64,000 nucleotides of DNA from Podarcis bocagei (lineage: Eukaryota): NCBI GenBank assembly GCA_964188305.1, contig OZ076893.1; one strand, 5' to 3'. Made by a program: the position numbers and the translations under genes. Below the pieces are notes generated by a model. It was not told the origin of the DNA. It ran no database searches and worked only from the letters and a program-made list of their open reading frames with translations. Position 1 is the stretch's first letter. Every line of letters begins with the position of its first letter. This document shows positions 7,932 to 59,677 of this stretch, piece after piece.

Positions 7932-8547
7932 CTATGAAAGAGAGAGAGAGAGAGAGAAAGAGAAAGAAAGAAAGAAAGGGAGAAAGAGAATAATAAGAAT
8001 TACAAGGATCATCGCCAGGTCAACAACAGTGCTTACAAGCAGCACATAGACTGGAGAGTTGGTTCATTGAAATGTATTTTGTTTCAACAGAAAGTGGAAA
8101 TGGAGGTTATCAAGATGAAAAATGAAAACTAGTTAGAAACTAAAGCTGCAGTTCAGCCACTGATCCTCAACTACATCCTTCCACCAATATTGTACGTGGG
8201 TATTCGTAAGCCGGGGTAGTTAACCCCGTTTGGGTGGCCTTCCAGCCCTACTCAACAAAGTTTCCTATTTTCCCAACACCTCACTGATTTTGGCAGCAGC
8301 CAGGAAAGCAGGGAATTCAAGCAGACACAGTGCTGAGGTAGCTGCATATGGCCTTGGGGCCAAAAGAGGTTTAGCCATCCCTGCTCTTAAGGATGCATTT
8401 TGAAGAAACACTAGTATATTCCCATGACAGACAAGATCTGGTGTAATATAGTGGATATGAGACTGAGCTATGAATTTGGGAGCTCCTGGTTAAAATTTCA
8501 CCTCTGCCATGAACTCACCAGGTGGCCTTTGGTAAGTTATTCTCTCT

Positions 8548-8980
8548 CAGCGGCGTAGCGTGAGTTGTCAGCACCCGGGGCAACGCAAGTAATTTGCGCC
8601 CCCTAACCCGGGGCAAGGCACGTAATTTGCGCCCCCCCTAACCCCTAACCTGCGAGTTGCCGCTGGTGCTGCTGCCCAAACGACGCCGCTTGCCCGGAGG
8701 AGGGGGGGGCAGAGAGGCGAGGAAAATGCAACGGCCAGCAGCTGCAGCAGCAGCGACGGAGGCGGGGCTGTGAGGAGGGGCTGCCTGGCGCGTCCTCCAC
8801 GGCGAGCGCTGAGAGCTGCTGCCTGCCGGGCGCCTTCAGCCCGGGCGCCGCGAGACATGGGGCTCTGCTACAGCCTGCGCCCGAGGCTCTTCGGCGACTC
8901 CGGAGGCAGCGAGCGCGCCCCCCCCCAGATGTTGCGCCCGGTGCGGCCTGCCCCCTGGCACCCCCCACGCTACGCCACTG
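8548..8980 (+). mobile_element. Non-autonomous hAT element with captured host cargo (Pack-hAT copy 1)
   Basis: TIRs cagcggcgtagcgtg / cacgctacgccactg; 8-bp TSD ttctctct at 8540-8547 and 8981-8988; subterminal tttgcgccccctaaccc repeats; interrupts an otherwise continuous CORE-SINE. Confidence 0.93.
8651..8910 (+). pseudogene. GNAL: Transposon-captured fragment of GNAL extra-long isoform (XL-G-alpha-olf) first exon: GC-rich 5'UTR, ATG at 8857, MGLCYSLRPRLFGDSGGS
   Basis: Peptide matches the recalled human XL-Golf N-terminus MGLCYSLRPLLFGG at 12 of the first 13 residues; Kozak-like gagacATGG; very CpG-rich compared with the host intron. Recognised from memory, not searched. Confidence 0.8.
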
Positions 8981-10227
8981 TTCTCTCTTAGCCTCAGCCA
9001 CCCACCCTCTGAATTATGGGTGGCACAACTACTGACTTACCTTTCAGTCTTGTTGTAAGCATTACAGCTAGATGATGAATGTGAAGTGAACACTTGTAAG
9101 TGCTATGGAAGCACTGGGCAGGATTCACCTAACCAGCGGCAGAAGCCCTGCGTCAGGACTTCCAGTTGTGAAACAGGGCTTTCTTTTCCCCTTCTTCTTC
9201 CCTCATATGTCCCCTGAAATTGCCTTGGGATGTGTGTGTGTCATGAGAACCCACAGAGTGGTGTGCCAGGGAAGAAGAGATGGTATATTTTCATCTGGGA
9301 AGCTGGAATGCTTGCAACAGACGGAACAACTGGAAGAGCACAATGCTGAATTTGGCCCATTACAGGAACATGCCTGATTTGAGTCTTATTTCATAATCAT
9401 ATTGGAATTGAAGAGCATGCTGTCCTTTTTACTTGAATGCATATCAAAGCATTCTCACATATTCTTTGTATGTATTTTACCTGGAGAGTTGTAATGATGA
9501 CAGCCTTAGTGTTTAAGCAGTATGTAATGTTTATTCACCTACTTGACTGTGAATTTCCCCATCTTCAAAAGAATTAACACCCCCCCAAAGAAAAAAAAAT
9601 AAGGGTGTGCATTAGTACTAGTCATCTTTATTATCATTCCACTATTGACTTGACTGATATACTTGACTGATAATCTACCTAGCATGCTTTTACTTCTAAA
9701 AATGATCTATACAATCTACACATTCTCTGTTGTTTTATTTATTTATTTAAAGTGTACTGTTTGATTTTTGCTCAATTAGCAACCCTGCAAACATAAACCT
9801 ATGCTGAACATACAGGACATAAATTAAGTAAAGAAATACAAACTCAGAATAAATAGTCTTAGATAAATACTCTTTTTTGTTTGTTTATTCGTGCAATTAT
9901 ATTTGGTTTGACAACACTTATATTTTGTACTATTGATCTTCAGTCACCCCTAAGCCATCCAGTGAAATACTCAATGTAGACCCATTGCCTCACAAATGAC
10001 ACTGTCTTATATCTGCTACTTGCATTTCACAAAAGAGTCAGTTTTCACATTAAAATGTAAATAACTGATCCAAAGGGCACTGAAATGTGTCTGAACCATT
10101 CAATTCACTTAAGTAGTGTTTAAATTATCTGTTGGACATAAATGATGGTAAATCAATAATCAAAATTACACTTAACTATTGAACATGATGTAGAAATAAG
10201 ATCTTGTTTAAATAAAATAATAAATAA

Positions 10228-18148: not shown

Positions 18149-18320
18149 NNNNNNNNNNNNNNNNNNNNNNNNNNNNNNNNNNNNNNNNNNNNNNNNNNNN
18201 NNNNNNNNNNNNNNNNNNNNNNNNNNNNNNNNNNNNNNNNNNNNNNNNNNNNNNNNNNNNNNNNNNNNNNNNNNNNNNNNNNNNNNNNNNNNNNNNNNNN
18301 NNNNNNNNNNNNNNNNNNNN
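18149..18320. other. Assembly gap (172 N) truncating a NOL4 exon
   Basis: Run of n characters. Confidence 1.
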
Positions 18321-29494: not shown

Positions 29495-30470
29495 TAAAGT
29501 CAAATGGTTGGAGAATTTCTTTTCTCTGTGCTACTCCGAGCTGTCAATGCTTCTCTGGTTACTGCTGTTGACATGCAATCTGACTGTCTGTCTCCAGGAA
29601 CTGCGATCATCTGCAAGGAATTCCCACATGGTGGGCTTAATGCTTCCAGCCTTCGTGTTATGTTTGCAGACATATTTGTAACACAGAGTTGGTTGGCCAG
29701 CAGGAACAGGCCTAGTGCCAGCTCCCCGTTGAGCACATCCTCGAGGATCCTGCCATCTTCCATGCTGTGTACATGACCAAGTCAGTGTAGATGTCGCTGA
29801 GATAGGAGCGCGAACATGCTGTGGGAATGTAGGCTTGGGAGAATACATATTTGTTTGAGACTCTGCCTGCCATGTGATGCCCCAAATCTTCCTGATGCAG
29901 TGCATATGGAAGGCATTGATTGTTAGCATCACATTTTCCCACACCCTTTTGGAGAGGTGAGTCATTGCCATAGCTGTTTTGCCAATATGCTCATCCAGTT
30001 CAGCATCGATAGACAGGTTGCTGGTTATGGTGGAGTCCAGGTAGGCAAAATCTTCTACCACCTCAAGTGTGAGGTCACCAGTGCTGATGTGTGGAGTGCT
30101 GCCAGTATCCTGACCCAGGATGTTGGTCTTTATCAGGCTGATCGCAAGGCCAAACTCCATGCAGGCATGGATAAAATGGTTTATGGGTCTCTGTAGAGCT
30201 TCCTTGGAATGAGCTGTCCAGACTGTATCATCTGCAAACAACATCTCTTGGATTAGAAACCCGCCCCCACACACACACACATCAAACTGAAGGCATAGGA
30301 GAGCAAGAAGTGGGCATCCTATCTTGTTGAGCACTTGAAGAGTCTTTTTCAGCTGACCAGGTCAAAGGCCTTTGTATGGTCTATGAAGACAACGTACAAG
30401 GGGCACCTCTATTCTAGGCATTTCTTCTGCAGCTGACGCAGTGAGAAAATCATGTCAACTGCTGACCTCA
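29495..30470 (-). mobile_element. Degenerate RTE-clade LINE, reverse-transcriptase and 3' fragment with internal deletions
   Basis: ORF 29531..30334 contains EMLFADD..AHS.EALQ, LEVVEDFAYL.STI, RIGK-like and FHM.CIRKI.GITWQ; upstream K-A-F-D-L-V-S motif; frameshifted. Confidence 0.88.
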
Positions 30471-31637: not shown

Positions 31638-31715
31638 TCTGTTGACACAATAAGGATACTAATACATACTGATCAACTCTGTTGACACAATAAGGATACT
31701 AATACATACTGATCA
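31638..31715 (+). repeat. Tandem duplication of a 38-bp unit (40-bp period)
   Basis: tctgttgacacaataaggatactaatacatactgatca occurs twice, identical. Confidence 0.95.
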
Positions 31716-32013
31716 TGAAACATGTGTGATTCATCCAACAGGAAGATTTCACAGGTCTTCTCAAAATACTGTATTTCAGATCAGAAATGAAAAACTTGCA
31801 GAATGTATTTCTGGTTGATAAAATATTGGTATTTGTTAGTATACTAATATGCACGTGAGAAATAGACAGTGTGAGCACAAAATAGCAGAAACAACTAGGT
31901 GTCAACAACTTTTCCAATTTCCTAATTTGCAAAGCCCTTGAACCGTTACAGTAGACTTTTCTTCTTCCTAATCTATGCTCTTGTAATATCTTGTGAACAT
32001 GGAAGCATCTTAC

Positions 32014-32297
32014 CTTGCTTCCATTTTCTTTTGCCTCTTGCTCCATCTTAAGATCAGATACTAGGATGTTCTTGTACTTGTTCTTTCCATCACTGCTTTG
32101 GTCATCTAACCTGTATTCTGACGTGAGCTGAGCAGAGAAGGGACTGTCACTCAGATTCAGCGGCTGTTCATCCGGTTCCAGAGGTGCTTTGCCATTACTG
32201 TTGGCTTCTGCCACTTCCCTGCAGTGTGTTCCCCCTGAAGCATTGGAACTGTGTCCTGCAGTCTCATTGCCGTTAAAACTCTCTGCAGCTGAATCAT
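32014..32297 (-). CDS. NOL4: NOL4 internal coding exon (~human exon 6), 284 nt: (D)DSAAESFNGNETAGHSS...DLKMEQEAKENGSK
   Basis: Inside ORF 31699..32400(-); acceptor tgtttcatag, donor AAG|gtaag; phase 1 to 0; peptide matches NOL4 (EQPLNLSDSP..AQLTSEYR..GKNKYKN). Confidence 0.97.
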
Positions 32298-33879
32298 CTA
32301 TGAAACACATGGATTTACAGTTTTTCAATGGCATGTCATCAATATTATCTTTATACCCAAACAACAAAAAATTACAAAAAACCCTACAACCTGCTGCCAC
32401 TCACACAACATTTCCAACAGTTCAGCTGAAAATATTTATGTGATTACCAGTCACTATTGACAGTCACAGAACAGTTAAGAAAATTTCAGCCAGAACAGAT
32501 TCTTTAATGACCTAGGCAGGTGGAAAAGGAAGGGCTTATCTTTCCACTTTATACGTGACATCATGACTCACTTGCTTAAGTTATATGGGGGGGATCTTTA
32601 CATATCCCAATTATTATGAATTATAGTTCTTTAAACCAGCAAAATATACAGTATTGGAATAGAAAGTTCCCATCCTCTGATGGAAGGAGACTTCCTCCAA
32701 TGGAAAGACTGCTTCTATGAGGGGATAATGCTCATTCCATCAGTTGGAAGGAAGGAACTATTATAGTCATCCTATTGGGAAAGTTTGGATGATCGTAGCT
32801 CAGCTTAATAGGCCAAAGCATGGATGAGCCTTTTGGCTGCACACAAAGCCTCTTGGCTCCTCCCTTCATGGCAGGAATAAACCAGGAAGTCTTCCATTAA
32901 CTATAGTTTCCTGTTTCATCCATACTGGGGAACCTAGGGTTAACAGCTTTGGAGGAAAGCAGACTACAGTATTTAAATCAACAGCAAATCATGACTTAAT
33001 GCCCAGGCTTGTCACAAAGTTTTCCACTATAGTTTCCCTGTTTGGTTGAAATGGAAAACTATATTATCTTAAACAAAATTGTGTCCTTTAAACACTTTTT
33101 TTGTTCTGAAGACATTGTTGTAAATAAACATGGTATGAAAAGAAAGTGCAGGTTACTTCTGCCTCTCATGTCAATCCTTTCCCAGGTCAATCAAATAAAA
33201 AAAAATCCAGCCAGACCAGAAGTGTCAGGACAGCATTAGGACGGTTACAGCAATAATCACAGCAGCTGCATAAAAGGTGGGATGCTGGAGGGTCAGACAT
33301 GGAAATAGACTGAAGGACAGAACAGGGATTTACAAGTGAGGGAGAGGGTGAGAAAATAGTACAGAAAGAAGAGGGGTTGCAAGGGAAGCCAGAGAGGTAT
33401 GAGAGAGTAAGAAAGGAATCCTGGGTTGGTAAGCCCAGTGATGAGCCAGTAAGAAAATGAAAGGGGGAGTGGTGGAGGAAGTGAATTACTATGTTAGAGA
33501 AAATAGAATGGTCCAGTGATAAGATTGGATCCAAACCTTTAGTTTAGGATAAGGGAGATAGTCTGGGGCTATGAGGATTATTGTGAGCTTGACAGGGAAT
33601 TCTGAGTTCTATCAATATGTTTAATATGGTTTTCCTAACAATTAATGAATTGTTTGTGCTGCTGAAATAAAATGTAAAGTCAATATACCGGCCATAGTTA
33701 GCCTTCCAATATTTTTCACATTGCTTTGTAATATCAATAGTATTTATGCTATTAATTGCTTGGTTATTGACCAAAAAGCAAAAGTAGTTTACAAACTGTC
33801 CCGACATAAAATTAGGAACACTTTGTTGCTTTTAAAAGAATAGTGATGAAAATGCATTGGGATTGTTTTGACAAGGTTC

Positions 33880-36285: not shown

Positions 36286-36611
36286 CAGACCCTCCAAGTG
36301 TCCCTATTTTCCAGGGACATCTCTGATTTACAGAAGCCGCCCCAGTTTCTGATTTGATCCTAGGAATGTCCTGCTTTTCCTTAGGATGTCCCTACTTTCA
36401 TTGGAGAAATGTTGGAGAGTATGGCATTATCTAACCCCCCGAGCTGTCTTTTTTAAAAAAAAATAAATAATGTTTTATTATGTTTTTATATGTGTTGGAA
36501 GCTGCCCAGAGTGCTGGGGCAACCCAATAAGATGTGTAGGGTATAAATAGTAAAATTATCATTAAGGAATGTGATGTCCCTATTTCCATCAGAGTAATGT
36601 TGGAGGGTATG
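36286..36611. mobile_element. TIR element (CATACCCTCCAAC-type ends) with an internally duplicated end and an embedded LINE-tail-like segment
   Basis: cagaccctccaag ... gttggagggtatg; flanking caccaca repeat; gatgtcccta..aatgttggag.gtatg occurs twice. Confidence 0.6.
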
Positions 36612-36755
36612 CACCACAGCTGCAGTAGCATTTATTGGGGGCTGGATCTGCTGCCCCCGTGGATCCTACTGGAGGTTGTTTCACCTTGCGTGATGAGTCA
36701 GCCACCCCTGCCTCTTGGCAAAAGTACCCTAGACCTGCTGCGCTGAGGGTCTCAT

Positions 36756-37739
36756 CAGTGGCGTAGCGTGGGGGGTGCCAGGGGTGCCAGCCGCACCGGG
36801 CGCAACACCTGGGGGGGCGCGAGTCCAGAGGGAAGGGACAAGCAATCGAGGCTTGGTTGGGGTGGGGGGTCGTCGTCTCCGCCACTGCTTCTGTTTTCCG
36901 CTGCGCTGAGGTGAGCTGGGCGCGGCCAGGCATGCAAGCGCAGCGCCTGGCCAAGCGCTGCAGCCTGGGGAGCCGGCGCCTTAGCGCCTCGCCGTCGGCC
37001 GCGCAGCCGTTGCCCAAGCTCGACAACTCGTGGAGGGCGCCTCTCTCTCTCTCTCTCTCTCTCTCTCCCTGGAGGGGAGGGGCTTTCCCTGCTCTTTGTT
37101 CCGTTTGAGCAAACACAGCAACGAAACAGAGCAGGGTGGGCAGTAAGACCCTGAGGCAGAATGCAGGAAAGCAGCCACTTCCTCTTTTCAGGTTTCCCTT
37201 CTCCGGTACCTACCCACCCACGTTTATTGCGAGGGAAATCTAGCTGACTGCAGGGAAGGGGTTGGGTGCATGTAATGTGTGACAAAGGCATCAGGTGTAC
37301 GTCTTGGGTGGAAAGGGTATAAGGGTGGGGAGGTAGAGTGCATTTAAAAAAACCAAAACATTGTGGATTTAAACAAGGAAAATGTAGCATAATCTACTGT
37401 TTGTAAGGGCCCTTTGGGATTGGTTTTACCCATCTCAGACAGTTAGCTCATAGTGTAAATAAAGATGGCTGTTGTTTACATTTTTTTAATAAAAGCATCA
37501 ACAACGATCCTTTTGCACGGTCTGTTGTGCTGTGTTGCAGAACTTTTTGCAGTTGCAGGATTAGGGATGGTGTTCTGTGCTACAGTGGCATAGCGTGGGG
37601 GGTGCAGGCTGGGCCGGCCACACCGGGCGCAACATCTGGGGGGCCGCGCTCCACGGGTTAGGGGGCGCAAAATCCACGGGTTAGGGGGCGCAAATTACTT
37701 GCCTTGCCCCGGGTGCTGACAACCCACGCTACGCCACTG
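36756..37739 (-). mobile_element. Same hAT family in opposite orientation; composite element carrying ~760 bp cargo plus a nested empty copy (Pack-hAT copy 2)
   Basis: TIRs cagtggcgtagcgtggg / cccacgctacgccactg; 8-bp TSD ggtctcat at 36748-36755 and 37740-37747; 36756-36821 is approximately the reverse complement of the right end of the 8548-8980 element. Confidence 0.93.
37583..37739 (-). mobile_element. Minimal empty 157-bp hAT MITE (core unit of the family), nested as the end of copy 2
   Basis: Both TIRs present (cagtggcatagcgtg...cacgctacgccactg); two ccacgggttagggggcgcaaa subterminal repeats; no TSD of its own (left flank ctgtgcta differs from right flank ggtctcat). Confidence 0.9.
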
Positions 37740-40700
37740 GGTCTCATGGAACCTTCCAGAACCTGGAACTGACATTGCAAATGCCAGCTCTCGAAATCAC
37801 TCTGCCTTCAATTAAAAGAACCATCAGGTAGTCGCAAGTATTTGCCTTACACAAGGAATATGTGTTCATTGCAGGCAAATTATTAAATTTACTTTTTTTT
37901 TCATTATAAGCCACTATTCTAGATTCTTTCCACCTTGATGAAAGAACATTCCATTTAATAGAATACTAACCTTGACAAGGTTATTTATTCAGAAACAACT
38001 ATTGAATGGGCATGTGACTGCTGGCGGAAGGGGGAAAATGCTTCCTCCTATGTTTATCCATGTCATTTGTGTTCTGTGAATTACATAAGGCAGAAAAAAG
38101 AACATCTATTGGAACATATTGATGGCAGCGCCTAATTTCCTTTGAGAGAGTTCTTAAGCTTTTAAACATTCACCATTGGATCCTTTCTCTGCAAAGTCAA
38201 ACTGCATCTTGACAATGTATCAGCAGAACACGTGTAATTTGTTTGCATGGAAATGGGATGTGTTTACTGCTTCAAAATATGTTTTAGAAATTTAAACTGG
38301 CATTCGAATTAATACTGCCAATATTAGCCTTTAATAGAAGGAACCTAATAAATATTGTAAATTATTCTTAATGCATGTAAAAAGAAACACGCAATCTTGC
38401 CTAAATCTTCATTTACTATCATAACAGAATTTAAATTCCATATAATGTACATTGCAACAATATAATTAGTGTTTTTCACTACAAACAAAAATCACCTCAT
38501 AATCCAGATGTTGTATTTTAAATCCTTCATGTCTCTCATATTGCTCATAAATATTTTAATTCAAAATACACACACCCCATGATAATCCACAAAACATTTC
38601 TTTTTTTCAAGGTGGTTTGTGCCAAAGCCTTGGATAATGCTTGGTGGTTTACACCCATCTTTTTTAGAAAAATGGGGGGGGGGGGTATTGATTTCAGAGC
38701 TGGCTATAAGGTTTATGGCAGAATGCCAAAATACTAAAACTGTTTCTGGGAATAGCAACAAAAACCAGATAAACATAAGGCACCTCTTTAGCCTAGACTG
38801 AGCTGAAATTATTTTTAAAATGACATACCAGGAAATTGTTAATGTGGGGACTAGTGGCTTTATTTGGTTTTTTAAACTAAAATGAATGTTCTGTAACCTG
38901 CCCTGGGACCTTACGGTGAAGGGTGGATAAGAAATCCAACCAACCAATCATTATTTTTTTTAAATGAACTATTAAAATACTTTCTTTTTATCCTACCACT
39001 AATACAATGGAGAGCTGCAGTAATGTTTACGTTATGTCACAAAAACATCACATAAGTCACACTGTCTTAATCTTATGGTACTTTTTTCTCCCTTTTTCAT
39101 TTAAAAATGGCAAGGAAGATAATAAATCAATGCTAAAATAATGTAAACTTGCATGTTCAAAATGAAATGTTCAGCACTTTGAGAAGTGGGAATTGCTTCA
39201 GTACACACAAATAGCTTTTCACACGCATTCTCATTTTCTTCTCAGCCTTCATGAACTTCAGGAATTTCCAAGTGTTCAAGAGATATATTGAAGCATTCAG
39301 TGTGTTGAATGCTCACTCCAGTTTGTAAAATATGCTCACTGCTGCTACTAAGCAAGCATTGCTAAGGTTTTCAGGTATACACCTTATGCTTTCCCTTTGC
39401 TTGTTGATAAAATAAGGCTTTACATCGCTATTGAAAATGGCACTTTAACTAGTGGATATATTCGTATTTCAGATGCAGGTGCCTGGTGTCATTTTGTTTG
39501 AGCATGGTCATGGGACATTCTTCAACAAGACTTAGAAAACCTTGATTCAATATTCCACTCAGGAGGAGCTGACACTTACTGTGAATTCTGCTCTTCAACT
39601 TAAATACCAAAGTCTGTGGCAGGCCAATTCTATCATTGCAGATACAGCATCCCTCGGGCGAGGTCCAACCTTTTTCTTGCAGTGCACCCAGGGATTAGCT
39701 TGACTTCCCCTACATTCTCTCCACTGCACAGTAAGAGCTAATCTTTCCTGCATGAAGCAAGAGATGGTGTTGCTATGACAACACATTCTAGCAGTGGGAC
39801 TACTGGGATGAGCTGAAAAGATGACAGGGAGACATGCACTCAGCCTTCCTCCAGGGCTATGGGCTCCTTCCTCTAGGATTTAATTCTCCCATGTTTACTG
39901 ACAGCTTGGGATGCTAATTATCTATGAATTTTGTCATTTGGAGATTAACTAGTTAAGACTATGGCTGAGTTATTAGAGAGTACTTCAGTGAAAATTGTTG
40001 TTTTTCAGTGTGTTATATATCGAGTAAGATGTGGCCACTTTATAAACCATTATACAGTTCTACCTCTTATCCCCAAATTAAGGACTCCCTGTGTGAAAGA
40101 AAAATAAAGACACATGCCAAGCCCAGTCCTTCAGCACCTGCCTCCTCCATAATCTTCCTTTTTGAGTTTGCCTCTTACCAAGACCTCAATATAACCGCTA
40201 TAACTGCAACATTTGAGCAACTAAATTTCTCAAGGTAGGGTCAGCAAATGCCAACAAATGCCTCATTTTTTACATGGGCTACTATAAGCCAAACCAAAAA
40301 AGGTTAAGAGAGCCTTCCAACAGCAAGGGTAAAAGAAATCCAGTCATTCACATCATTCACATATTGTATGTGTAACAGACACTTACGGTAACTTCCAGAG
40401 AAACAAACTGGTTCTGTTTGCTTGTTTTTTTCCAATATAAAGAGCCTTTTAGACTATTTTACTATGTTCACTTGTTTAATATAAAAAAATGGCTTAGCTG
40501 CTTTCTGGTGCTCCTGTCTCCCAGAGCACATTCCACAGAATTTTCATCTTCATTTGACTTGAATAGCCTTTAGCCATCTAAAGTATGGGTGACCATAGAG
40601 TTTGTTGCCTTTCTGGCTGGCTTTGGGCATTCACTGAAAGCAGTAATTAATGAAGCATGATGCTTCCTCTAAGATTGCTTCTGGGATTTGTGCCAATGAT

Positions 40701-41169: not shown

Positions 41170-42310
41170 GTGGGGGACACATCATCTCCTTCTGGGATAG
41201 TTTGTCCACCTTTGGTTCCCTCTTTGCACTTAGCTCTCACCTGTGGCTCCTAGAAGCTGTCAGCGTGCAACAGTGGTCACAACCTGGGAAATGTACTTGA
41301 CTGGTTGGCTAAATCAGGTGAGAGTAGCCGATGGGTCTCAAACCCCCAGTTAGTTAGGGACTTTCCCTGCATGTGTAGACAGGGTCTGTCAGATTTAGTG
41401 GCCGAGACCAATAGTGTGTCCAAGGGTCAAGAAGGTGGTTACTGCATGTGCTGTTGAGGAAAATGAGGGGCAGATGGGGCTTGTCAACCTGGGAAGGTAG
41501 CCCATTTGGGAGAAGGAACACTCTGATCCTAAACCTTCACTGCCTTGTGGCTATACTCATTCATGAGAAAGGCTTCCGGAATTAACCCCAAGGAAAAATC
41601 TGTACCCTACACAAATCCAGAGTGGAGTACCTGAGATGGTTGTTTGGTGTCTTGTATGCCTCCTTCCGGGTTGGGACGCGGGTGGCGCTGTGGGTTAAAC
41701 CTCAGCGCCTAGGACTTGCCGATCACATGATCGGTGGTTCAAATCCCCGCGGCGGGGTGCGCTCCCGTTGCTCGGTCCCAGCGCCTGCCAACCTAGCAGT
41801 TCGAAAGCACCCCCGGGTGCAAGTAGATAAATAGGGACCGCTTACCAGCGGGAAGGTAAACGGCGCTTCCGTGTGCGGCTCTGGCTCGCCAGAGTAGCTT
41901 CGTCATGCTGGCCACGTGACCCGGATGTGTCTGCGGACAGCGCTGGCTCCTGGTCTCTAGAGTGAGATGAGCGCACAACCCTAGAGTCTGTCAAGGCTGG
42001 CCCGTACTGGCAGGGGTATCTTTACCTGTACCTTTATGCCTCCTTCCAGCAACTCCTGCAGCCCAGCTGGTGCCAAATGTATTGATCTACTTTCCTTTGG
42101 ACCACATCAAGGCTGAGAGTGTGGTCTTGTCATCTGGGCAACCCAGGACCTCCATACACACCACCCGGGCTTGCACCCCAGGGAAATCACTTTGGTGCTG
42201 CTAGTGTAGGAAAAACATGTGGGAGGCAGCAGTTATGAGTTATTGGTCTTTGTAGTCACAGCAAGTGCTGTGATTCTCTAGTGGTTTGACTTCACCCCAG
42301 GAAGCACACC
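41170..42310 (+). mobile_element. Probable RTE-type LINE 5'UTR fragment interrupted by a Sauria SINE
   Basis: Motifs gtagcccat.tgggagaaggaa.actctgatcctaaacc and gtcatctgggca.cccaggacc resemble RTE 5' regions (recall only). Confidence 0.5.
41668..42034 (+). mobile_element. Sauria SINE (lacertid type), full length, young
   Basis: gggacgcgggtggcgctgtgg tRNA-like head, ccaacctagcagttcgaaagc core, (tacctt) tail; TSD tatgcctccttcc. Confidence 0.93.
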
Positions 42311-56799: not shown

Positions 56800-57748
56800 A
56801 AGTATAGAAGGGTGCACTGACAGAGCTACGACACTGGAAAAAAATGGTGACAGCTTTAAGTGAACGCTAGGAAATGGAAGGAAGTATTCTAGTGGAGTGC
56901 ATCTGTACACTGGTATTAACAAATTGTGTTATACTATTCTCTGTACAACAGCAAAGAATTTAAACCTTCATACTTAGAGAAGTAGTCTTAGGCTTTAGTA
57001 TAAGGTTTCACTGCATCCTTGCATTTAATAGCCATTCCCATTCATTGCATTAAGTGCATTAAGTTGGGGGGTGGGATGGCACATGCTGTTATCCTTCCCA
57101 ACCTTCATATATTCAGCTGAATTTCTTCATGGATGCTACATTCATAAAACAGTTTGCATGTAGGGCTTTCTTTGCATTATAGAGAACCTGAAACACAAAT
57201 GACCTCACTTGTTTTCCTCCATACACATTCAGTGTGGCATGTGAATGGGGCTTCCCATTCATTCATATAGTTCTTAGGTCTTGGCCTATCTCTGATATGG
57301 GATGTTACTAGGATGCAAGATAAAGTTCAAAAGGGTAATAGGTGTAGTCAAGGGCAGCATGGCAGTCAGACACTGGACTGCTATATTTTAGTACTGTGGG
57401 GACAAAATCTTGCCTCCAATTGGACACTCATCTCCCTTAGATCACAGACTTGGAACCACAATTGCTTCCATTTACTTAAAATGAACCCTAATCCACTCCA
57501 TGCCAACCTCAATTTTACACGAAAAAGACTAATAAAATTGTTGTCAGTATATTGTGGATACAATCTCTACTAAAGCAGACTCTATGTCAGAAGCAAGACT
57601 GAAAATCCTCTTTCTGACATCTCTGCTACTACAAGCCTTTTTTTCTTTTTCTTTTTCGGCTGAAGTCCTGCTTCTTTATTTTTTGCTAGTGTTTAGAAGG
57701 GAGACCTATATTTTTCCAGTGATCTTGAGGACTCACAGGTATATGCAA

Positions 57749-59306: not shown

Positions 59307-59677
59307 CGCGGGTGGGACGCGGGTGGCGCTGTGGGTAAAAGCCTCAACGCCTAGGGCTTGCCGATCGAAAGGTCGGCAGTTTGAATCCCCACGGCGGGGT
59401 GCGCTCCTGTTGCTCGGTCCCAGCGCCTGCCAACCTAGCAGTTCGAAAGCAAGCACCCCCAGGTGCAAGTAGATAAATAGGGACCGCTTACTAGCGGGAA
59501 GGTAAATGGTGTTTCCGTGTGCGGCTCTGGCTCACCAGAGCAGCGATGTCACGCTGGCCATGTGACCCGGAAGTGTCTCCGGACAGCGCTGGCCCCCGGC
59601 CTCTTGAGTGAGATGGGCGCACAATCCTAGAGTCTGTCAAGACTGGCCCGTACGGGCAGGGGTACCTTTACCTTTAA
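59307..59677 (+). mobile_element. Sauria SINE, full length, with duplicated 5' tip
   Basis: gacgcgggtg repeated at the head; tail gtacctttaccttta; TSD ggacccaga. Confidence 0.92.

What the first reader, a model, noticed from the sequence alone, without database searches (positions are those of the whole stretch)
36756..37747. Three-ended composite element: a snapshot of the capture mechanism
Seen: the structure is [terminal module 36756-36821]-[761-bp cargo]-[complete 157-bp empty MITE 37583-37739]. Only the outermost ends share a TSD (ggtctcat). The inner copy's flank (ctgtgcta) is not duplicated, and the two equivalent terminal modules differ by several substitutions. Inference: gap repair after excision switched template into a CpG island and copied through into a different resident MITE copy (or two neighbouring copies mobilised the DNA between them), and the composite then transposed here.
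Basis: partly seen in the sequence, partly recalled or inferred. Interest (0 to 1): 0.78.

Follow-up and report, generated by a model that had tools for sequence, protein, structure and literature searches.

The report
Two-transposon compound unit carrying host DNA
Two small cut-and-paste (hAT) transposons, the left one with a crippled right end, sit around 695 bases of promoter-like host DNA and appear to have jumped together as one 984-base unit into this lizard intron. The process is known from maize and was already seen elsewhere in this genome.

Summary
A 66-nt 5' end module (36756-36821), 761 nt of other DNA and a complete 157-nt short element (37583-37739) lie inside one perfect 8-bp target-site duplication, GGTCTCAT. 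The inner junctions carry no duplication.

One correction: the unit has four ends, not three. At 36877-36887, 55 nt after the 5' module, stands CTCCGCCACTG. That is 10 of 11 bases of the family's 3' terminus, in the right orientation (chance 15 in 20,000 shuffles). The left unit is therefore a whole 132-nt element (M1) whose 3' side has lost everything but the tip. The true cargo is 695 nt (36888-37582), and its first ~210 nt are CpG-island-like.

Best reading (about 0.55): a hAT macrotransposon. Transposase paired M1's good 5' end with the 3' end of the next element (M2) and moved everything between them.

The donor locus could not be sought. Ectopic gap repair in place, a re-replication-type composite and an assembly loop therefore stay open.

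Earlier follow-ups of this scan reported like composites on other DNA of this genome. Known kind, new member.

The parts
36748..36755 (.). left copy of the 8-bp target-site duplication, GGTCTCAT
   Evidence: read directly; identical to 37740-37747
36756..36887 (+). M1: 132-nt non-autonomous hAT element with an intact 5' side and a crippled 3' side
   Evidence: 5' TIR 36756-36772 is a perfect match to the family terminus. 5' module 36756-36821 is 91% identical to the copy at 8548-8980. A 3' terminus lies at 36877-36887.
36822..36876 (+). 55-nt filler inside M1, standing where the 3' subterminal module should be
   Evidence: No significant likeness to the 3' modules of M2 or of the 8548-8980 copy (2927 and 220 of 3000 shuffles reach the score). 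Holds no GGGCGCAA or GGGTTAGGGGGCGC motif.
36877..36887 (+). degenerate 3' terminus of M1: CTCCGCCACTG, 10/11 of CTACGCCACTG, but only 11/17 of the full TIR by my own letter count
   Evidence: 15 of 20,000 shuffles give such a match within 150 nt; the 8-mer CGCCACTG occurs nowhere else in the window outside true termini
36888..37582 (+). 695 nt of carried host DNA. Its two edge 8-mers, CTTCTGTT (36888-36895) and CTGTGCTA (37575-37582), are inferred to be half-duplications left from the donor locus.
   Evidence: No second copy in the window. No Pfam or Rfam match. The half-duplication reading is inference.
36888..37100 (+). CpG-island-like part of the cargo, with a splice-donor-like GAG|GTGAGC at 36910/36911 and a (CT)13 run at 37041-37067
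   Evidence: GC 0.676 and CpG o/e 0.78, against 0.20-0.29 in the flanks and 0.22 in the window. CT run. The splice-site likeness is by eye only.
37583..37739 (+). M2: complete 157-nt short element with 5' module, two 23-nt subterminal repeats (37650-37694) and 3' TIR
   Evidence: its 3' part is 91-94% identical to the copy at 8548-8980
37740..37747 (.). right copy of the target-site duplication, GGTCTCAT
   Evidence: read directly
8548..8980 (-). reference copy of the same family with another GC-rich interior; own 8-bp duplication TTCTCTCT at 8540-8547 and 8981-8988

Best explanation
This is a hAT macrotransposon (compound transposon).

At some donor locus, two non-autonomous elements of one family lay in the same orientation 695 nt apart, at the edge of a CpG island. 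The left one (M1) keeps a perfect 5' end. On its 3' side only the last ~11 nt remain, and the subterminal GGGTTAGGGGGCGCAAA repeats are replaced by unrelated filler.

Transposase supplied in trans therefore paired M1's 5' end with the next usable 3' end, that of M2. It cut out the whole 984-nt stretch and pasted it into this intron, making the 8-bp duplication GGTCTCAT.

Shown here: the four ends and their order, the single outer duplication, the absence of inner duplications, the missing 3' subterminal motifs in M1, and the foreign CpG-rich nature of the interior.

Inferred: the donor arrangement, that M1's 3' end is non-functional, and that the move was one cut-and-paste event.
For: - Ends stand in the order 5'-3'...5'-3' on one strand.
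- The outer TIR pair is 17/17 complementary. M1's own 3' TIR matches only 11/17 by my own letter count, and M2's own pair is 16/17.
- There is a perfect 8-bp duplication at the outer ends only.
- M1's 3' tip is unlikely to be chance (15/20,000). The 55 nt before it are unrelated to the family's 3' module.
- All 7 GGGCGCAA sites of the 64-kb window lie in family modules, and none lies in M1's 3' part.
- The two 5' modules differ by about 14%, so they are two separate source copies.
- CpG o/e of the units and of the cargo's left part is 0.72-0.78, against 0.2-0.3 in the flanks. The unit is foreign to this intron, and probably young.
- Precedent in the same superfamily: Ac/fAc macrotransposons excise and reinsert with 8-bp duplications (PMC9910405, PMC4270019).
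- Earlier follow-ups of this scan (s1-352248, s1-335475; not checked by me) report like composites in this genome, one with empty sites in related lizards.
Against: - The donor locus was not found, so it is not shown that the 695 nt are contiguous there or that each unit has its own duplication there.
- No second copy of the composite and no empty orthologous site was seen.
- That M1's 3' end is dead is inferred from sequence only.
- M1's 3' tip is one 11-mer found after looking, although its position and strand were fixed by the model.
- An in-place origin by ectopic gap repair predicts the same final sequence.
Confidence: 0.55

Rival explanations
1. Ectopic gap repair, built in place. A single ordinary element first sat at GGTCTCAT. 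After it excised from one chromatid, the break was repaired by copying. The growing strand, tipped with element sequence, re-invaded a look-alike copy (M2') at another locus and ran on through that copy's flank and its neighbour M1. It then annealed with the other end inside the 5' module. No compound transposition took place. The first reader's version (template switch, then transposition of the product) is a variant of this.
For: - It explains the outer duplication, the lack of inner duplications and the difference between the two 5' modules just as well.
- Gap filling with template switching is the favoured origin of single-copy Pack-TIRs in animals (PMC8277862).
- The outer parts (M1 5' module at 91%, M2 3' part at 91-94% to the 8548 copy) are slightly closer to the reference than M2's 5' module (87%). 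A chimera would show this pattern, but the counts are too small to matter.
- A 12-mer is shared between the left flank and the cargo (6/500 shuffles), which might be a repair trace.
Against: - It needs about 900 nt of synthesis on an ectopic template and two homology-guided switches.
- It gives no role to M1's crippled 3' end, which macrotransposition explains naturally.
Confidence: 0.22
2. Composite insertion of the maize reversed-ends type. The 3' end of M2 and the 5' end of M1 faced each other at the donor and attacked this target during replication. Re-replication of both elements and their flanks then aborted, and the two flanks were joined. The cargo would be a fusion of two non-adjacent pieces.
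For: - Composite insertions bounded by a complete Ac and a fractured Ac, with 8-bp duplications, are documented (PMC4270019).
- The cargo changes character near 37100, from GC 0.68 with CpG o/e 0.78 to GC 0.45 with o/e 0.34. That could be a junction.
Against: - The same change is expected at any CpG-island edge.
- The model asks for more steps.
- No junction signature was seen.
- It has never been shown outside plants, as far as the papers read here say.
Confidence: 0.1
3. This is not a biological unit. Either an assembly loop through dispersed element copies inserted foreign sequence into a simple insertion, or two independent insertions entered native intron DNA and the flank match is chance.
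For: The family is said to be high-copy (s1-347476, unchecked), and repeats can mislead assemblers.
Against: - The two 5' modules differ by about 14%, so they would not collapse in a graph.
- The chance of an 8/8 flank match is 1/65,536, and neither unit has a duplication of its own.
- The interior's CpG content is unlike the intron's.
Confidence: 0.05

Closest known systems
Ac/fAc macrotransposons of maize (Huang and Dooner 2008, as cited in PMC9910405 and PMC4270019)
   Same: Same superfamily (hAT). The 5' end of one element and the 3' end of a second, nearby element act together. The DNA between them moves along, and one 8-bp duplication is made at the outer ends. One partner is defective (fAc is a fractured element).
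   Different: Here both partners are tiny non-autonomous elements of 132 and 157 nt, the unit is under 1 kb, the host is a lizard, and the event is inferred from one genome and not observed genetically.
Pack-TIR / Pack-hAT elements of animals (PMC8277862)
   Same: A TIR transposon shell holding host-derived, non-transposon DNA. hAT is the commonest carrier (208 of 370). 5' gene regions are often captured.
   Different: Pack-TIRs are defined as one shell with the host piece inside, and are explained by gap filling or FoSTeST. Here two inner ends are still present, which points to mobilisation of flanking DNA by two elements and not to filling of one.
Bacterial composite transposons (IS-cargo-IS, e.g. 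Tn5, Tn10); my own knowledge
   Same: Two copies of a small element bracket passenger DNA, and the outer ends are used for transposition.
   Different: A different transposase family. The IS copies encode the transposase, and there is no crippled inner end as a rule.
Read-through past a weak end (ISEcp1, IS91, Helitrons; Helitron capture in PMC4778049)
   Same: A poor or missed 3' end makes the machinery use a later end-like signal, so downstream host DNA is carried off.
   Different: Those are one-ended or rolling-circle mechanisms. Here it is a cut-and-paste element that needs two TIRs.
hobo_AC of Anolis carolinensis (PMC3014272)
   Same: Lizard hAT elements that gain and lose internal DNA at a high rate and form composites.
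   Different: Those are described as filler DNA and inter-element recombination within single elements. No compound units with inner ends are described there.

Membership tests
hAT superfamily | 8-bp target-site duplication | tested here: met
   GGTCTCAT at 36748-55 and 37740-47; TTCTCTCT at 8540-47 and 8981-88
hAT superfamily | short TIR beginning YARNG | tested here: met
   The 17-nt TIR begins CAGTG; the outer pair is 100% complementary
hAT superfamily | transposase with hAT dimerisation domain in the autonomous partner | not testable with these tools
   No coding ORF in the unit: Pfam was blank for its two long ORFs. No transposase was seen among the window's ORFs of 110 aa or more that were scanned.
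hAT superfamily | target consensus nTnnnnAn | tested here: inconclusive
   Each of the two duplications meets one of the two fixed positions; two sites are too few
Macrotransposon (Ac type) | two elements in direct orientation around non-element DNA | tested here: met
   Ends in the order 5'-3'...5'-3' on the + strand; M1's 3' end is degenerate
Macrotransposon (Ac type) | one duplication at the outer ends, none shared by the ends of either single element | tested here: met
   outer 8/8; M1 flanks GGTCTCAT / CTTCTGTT; M2 flanks CTGTGCTA / GGTCTCAT
Macrotransposon (Ac type) | donor locus with both elements, each with its own duplication, and the interior contiguous | not testable with these tools
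ORF word search, exact look-up and metagenome scans were blank.
Macrotransposon (Ac type) | empty target site in relatives, or other copies of the whole unit elsewhere | not testable with these tools
   Same reason as above; none in the window
Pack-TIR | interior derived from an identifiable host parent locus | not testable with these tools
   The parent was not found. The interior is CpG-island-like but has no coding or RNA match.
Pack-TIR | a single shell, with host DNA directly between the 5' and 3' parts of one element | tested here: not met
   Two inner ends are present (36877-87 and 37583-99). The copy at 8548-8980 does meet this.

The most novel reading that the evidence does not exclude
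Compound transposition past a crippled 3' end may be the regular first step by which this lizard hAT family picks up CpG-island DNA. Elements land near promoters, and a pair brackets promoter DNA. The pair then moves as one, and later loss of the inner ends leaves the ordinary 'shell plus cargo' form seen at 8548-8980. M1, with only 11 nt of its 3' side left, would be a half-way stage. This would be a route to Pack-type elements distinct from gap filling and FoSTeST, and it would explain the bias toward 5' gene ends.
Probability: 0.15. Interest if true: 0.7.

Novelty: new member of a known kind. Interest (0 to 1): 0.38.

Why it matters
How DNA transposons pick up host gene pieces is still argued, mainly between gap filling, template switching and flank mobilisation. 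A unit that still holds its inner ends records how it was built, which the usual finished Pack-type copies do not.

If the donor locus confirms two neighbouring elements, this is one more natural vertebrate case of the macrotransposition known from maize genetics. It would also show that a crippled end can turn a small element into a carrier of promoter DNA. The unit has placed a CpG-island-like piece with a splice-donor-like site inside an intron of a host gene, and such a piece could seed new transcripts.

The kind is known, and this scan has met it before in this genome, so the gain is incremental.

Tried and rejected
- Getting lizard DNA through spurious ORFs: the word search with the 211-aa ORF across the cargo found nothing. 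An exact look-up of ten ORFs in and beside the unit found nothing.
- Metagenome scans: two scans, one with a cargo 26-mer and one with the terminal 23-mer, found nothing.
- Earlier findings, by sequence and by relatives: blank.
- Literature search for the terminal 13-mer: no paper.
- Cargo as a copy of other window DNA: rejected. Only the CT run matches elsewhere.
- Cargo as coding or a known RNA: no Pfam and no Rfam match.
- M1's 3' part as a diverged whole 3' module: a global alignment including the tip looked significant (9/2000). Without the last 11 nt the likeness vanishes, so I read it as filler plus tip.
- A 10/17 likeness to the 5' terminus inside the 8548 copy's interior: judged to be at chance level by eye and not pursued.
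- The match at 56826-56836 to the 3' tip (1 mismatch): no element context, so chance.
- The host gene's strand, and hence sense or antisense placement: not determined. No exon lies in the window.

Full report
**What is there**

- A 66-nt module at 36756-36821 recurs at 37583-37648 with 85% identity without gaps (87% with one gap).
- The stretch 37583-37739 has inverted ends (16/17).
- The far ends, 36756-36772 and 37723-37739, are 17/17 complementary.
- GGTCTCAT abuts both far ends (36748-36755 and 37740-37747).
- The inner element's left flank, CTGTGCTA, is not repeated.

The 17-nt terminus occurs five times in the window against 0.04 expected. The other two sites bound a third copy at 8548-8980 on the minus strand. 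That copy has its own 8-bp duplication, TTCTCTCT, and a different GC-rich interior.

An 8-bp duplication together with a TIR starting CAGTG is the hAT signature. This rests on established knowledge of the superfamily. No transposase lies in or near the unit.

**A fourth end**

The first 66 nt of the supposed cargo end in CTCCGCCACTG (36877-36887). That is 10 of 11 bases of the 3' terminus CTACGCCACTG, on the strand and side where a 3' end of the left unit should be.
- In the whole window, both strands, the 8-mer CGCCACTG is found only at the three true termini and here.
- In 20,000 dinucleotide shuffles of the GC-rich part, a match this good fell within 150 nt of the module 15 times.
- A global alignment of 36822-36888 with the 3' module first looked significant. 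Once the last 11 nt are removed, nothing is left (2927 and 220 of 3000 shuffles reach the score).
- GGGCGCAA occurs seven times in 64 kb, always inside family modules. The longer GGGTTAGGGGGCGC marks the 3' modules. Neither is present in 36822-36876.

So the left unit, M1 (36756-36887, 132 nt), is a complete element in outline. It has a good 5' side, 55 nt of unrelated filler, and only the tip of a 3' end (11/17 of the TIR by my count). The carried DNA proper is 36888-37582, 695 nt.

**The cargo**

It has no second copy in the window apart from a CT run. It has no Pfam match for its ORFs and no Rfam match.
- Its left 213 nt have GC 0.68 and CpG observed/expected 0.78.
- The remainder has GC 0.45 and o/e 0.34.
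- The flanks have o/e 0.20-0.29, and the window as a whole 0.22.

It is thus foreign to this intron and CpG-island-like on its left side. A GAG|GTGAGC at 36910/36911 looks like a splice donor, by eye only. I could not name the gene.

**How it most likely arose**

Neither unit has a duplication of its own here, while the outer flanks match 8/8. The two units did not insert here separately.

The simplest path is macrotransposition:
- At a donor locus, M1 and M2 lay in direct order 695 nt apart.
- M1's 3' end was unusable.
- Transposase joined M1's 5' end, a perfect partner of M2's 3' TIR, with M2's 3' end and moved the whole stretch.

This is what Ac and fractured Ac do in maize. Such units excise, leave 8-bp footprints and reinsert (PMC9910405; PMC4270019). 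The edge 8-mers CTTCTGTT and CTGTGCTA would then be the halves of the two donor-site duplications that travelled along.

The family's other copy in the window (8548-8980) is an ordinary 'shell plus cargo' form, with the interior joined within a few bases of the point where M1's filler starts. By an earlier follow-up (s1-347476, not checked by me) that form is high-copy.

**Rivals**

- In-place gap repair between dispersed copies would give the same letters. A single element at GGTCTCAT excises, and the repair strand hops into a look-alike copy elsewhere. It copies that copy's flank and its neighbour, then anneals in the 5' module. Gap filling is the favoured source of single-copy Pack-TIRs in animals (PMC8277862). 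It gives no role to M1's crippled end.
- A reversed-ends, re-replication composite (PMC4270019) would make the cargo a fusion of two flanks. The change of composition near 37100 allows this but does not call for it.
- An assembly loop is unlikely, because the two modules differ by about 14%, but it could not be excluded without reads.

I put these at 0.55, 0.22, 0.10 and 0.05. The rest goes to paths not thought of.

**What could not be done**

- Routes through ORF look-ups and metagenome scans were blank.
- The other collections hold no lizard DNA.
- The donor, the orthologous site and the copy number are therefore untested.
- The N run at 18149-18320 was left alone.

**Earlier findings of this scan**

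Notes place the window in a wall-lizard-type genome with many 'Pack-hAT' elements. Two followed-up cases on other DNA are close to this one:
- a unit with 'a dead right end' and a spare right end (s1-335475);
- two small hAT elements that moved 1.3 kb together, with empty sites in three relatives (s1-352248).

I reached the crippled-end reading, before seeing them. They agree with it but are unchecked notes, not evidence.

**Verdict**

This is a real, well-bounded compound hAT unit. It has four ends, not three, and is best read as a macrotransposon. It is a new member of a known kind, and of moderate interest because the inner ends preserve how it was built.

Noticed in passing
window 36737-36748 and 36900-36911: The 12-mer GCTGCGCTGAGG stands in the left flank, touching the target-site duplication, and again in the cargo 13 nt after M1's 3' tip. 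It is the longest flank-composite match and was reached by 6 of 500 shuffles. Chance, target choice or a repair trace: unresolved.
   Followed up: partly
window 8594-8634, 8932-8939, 36798-36805, 37625-37693: All seven GGGCGCAA sites of the 64-kb window lie inside modules of this family, in the same orientation on the 5' and 3' sides of each element. This is a candidate subterminal transposase-binding motif. The number of 3' repeats varies: a 23-nt tandem in M2, and a longer unit in the 8548 copy.
   Followed up: partly
window 41668-42035 and 59307-59667: Two CpG-rich copies of a ~365-nt SINE-like repeat, 92% alike. Each has its own direct flank repeat: ATGCCTCCTTCC and GGACCCAGA. ARAGORN calls no tRNA in them.
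   Followed up: partly
window 29534-30334 (-) and 31702-32400 (-): Long ORFs. The first has a weak reverse-transcriptase match (RVT_1, E 0.0019, below the cutoff). Probably a decayed LINE.
   Followed up: no
window 36385-36423 and 36573-36611: A 39-nt direct repeat, 85% alike, just left of the insertion site. The composite may have landed in an older repeat.
   Followed up: no
   Followed up: no
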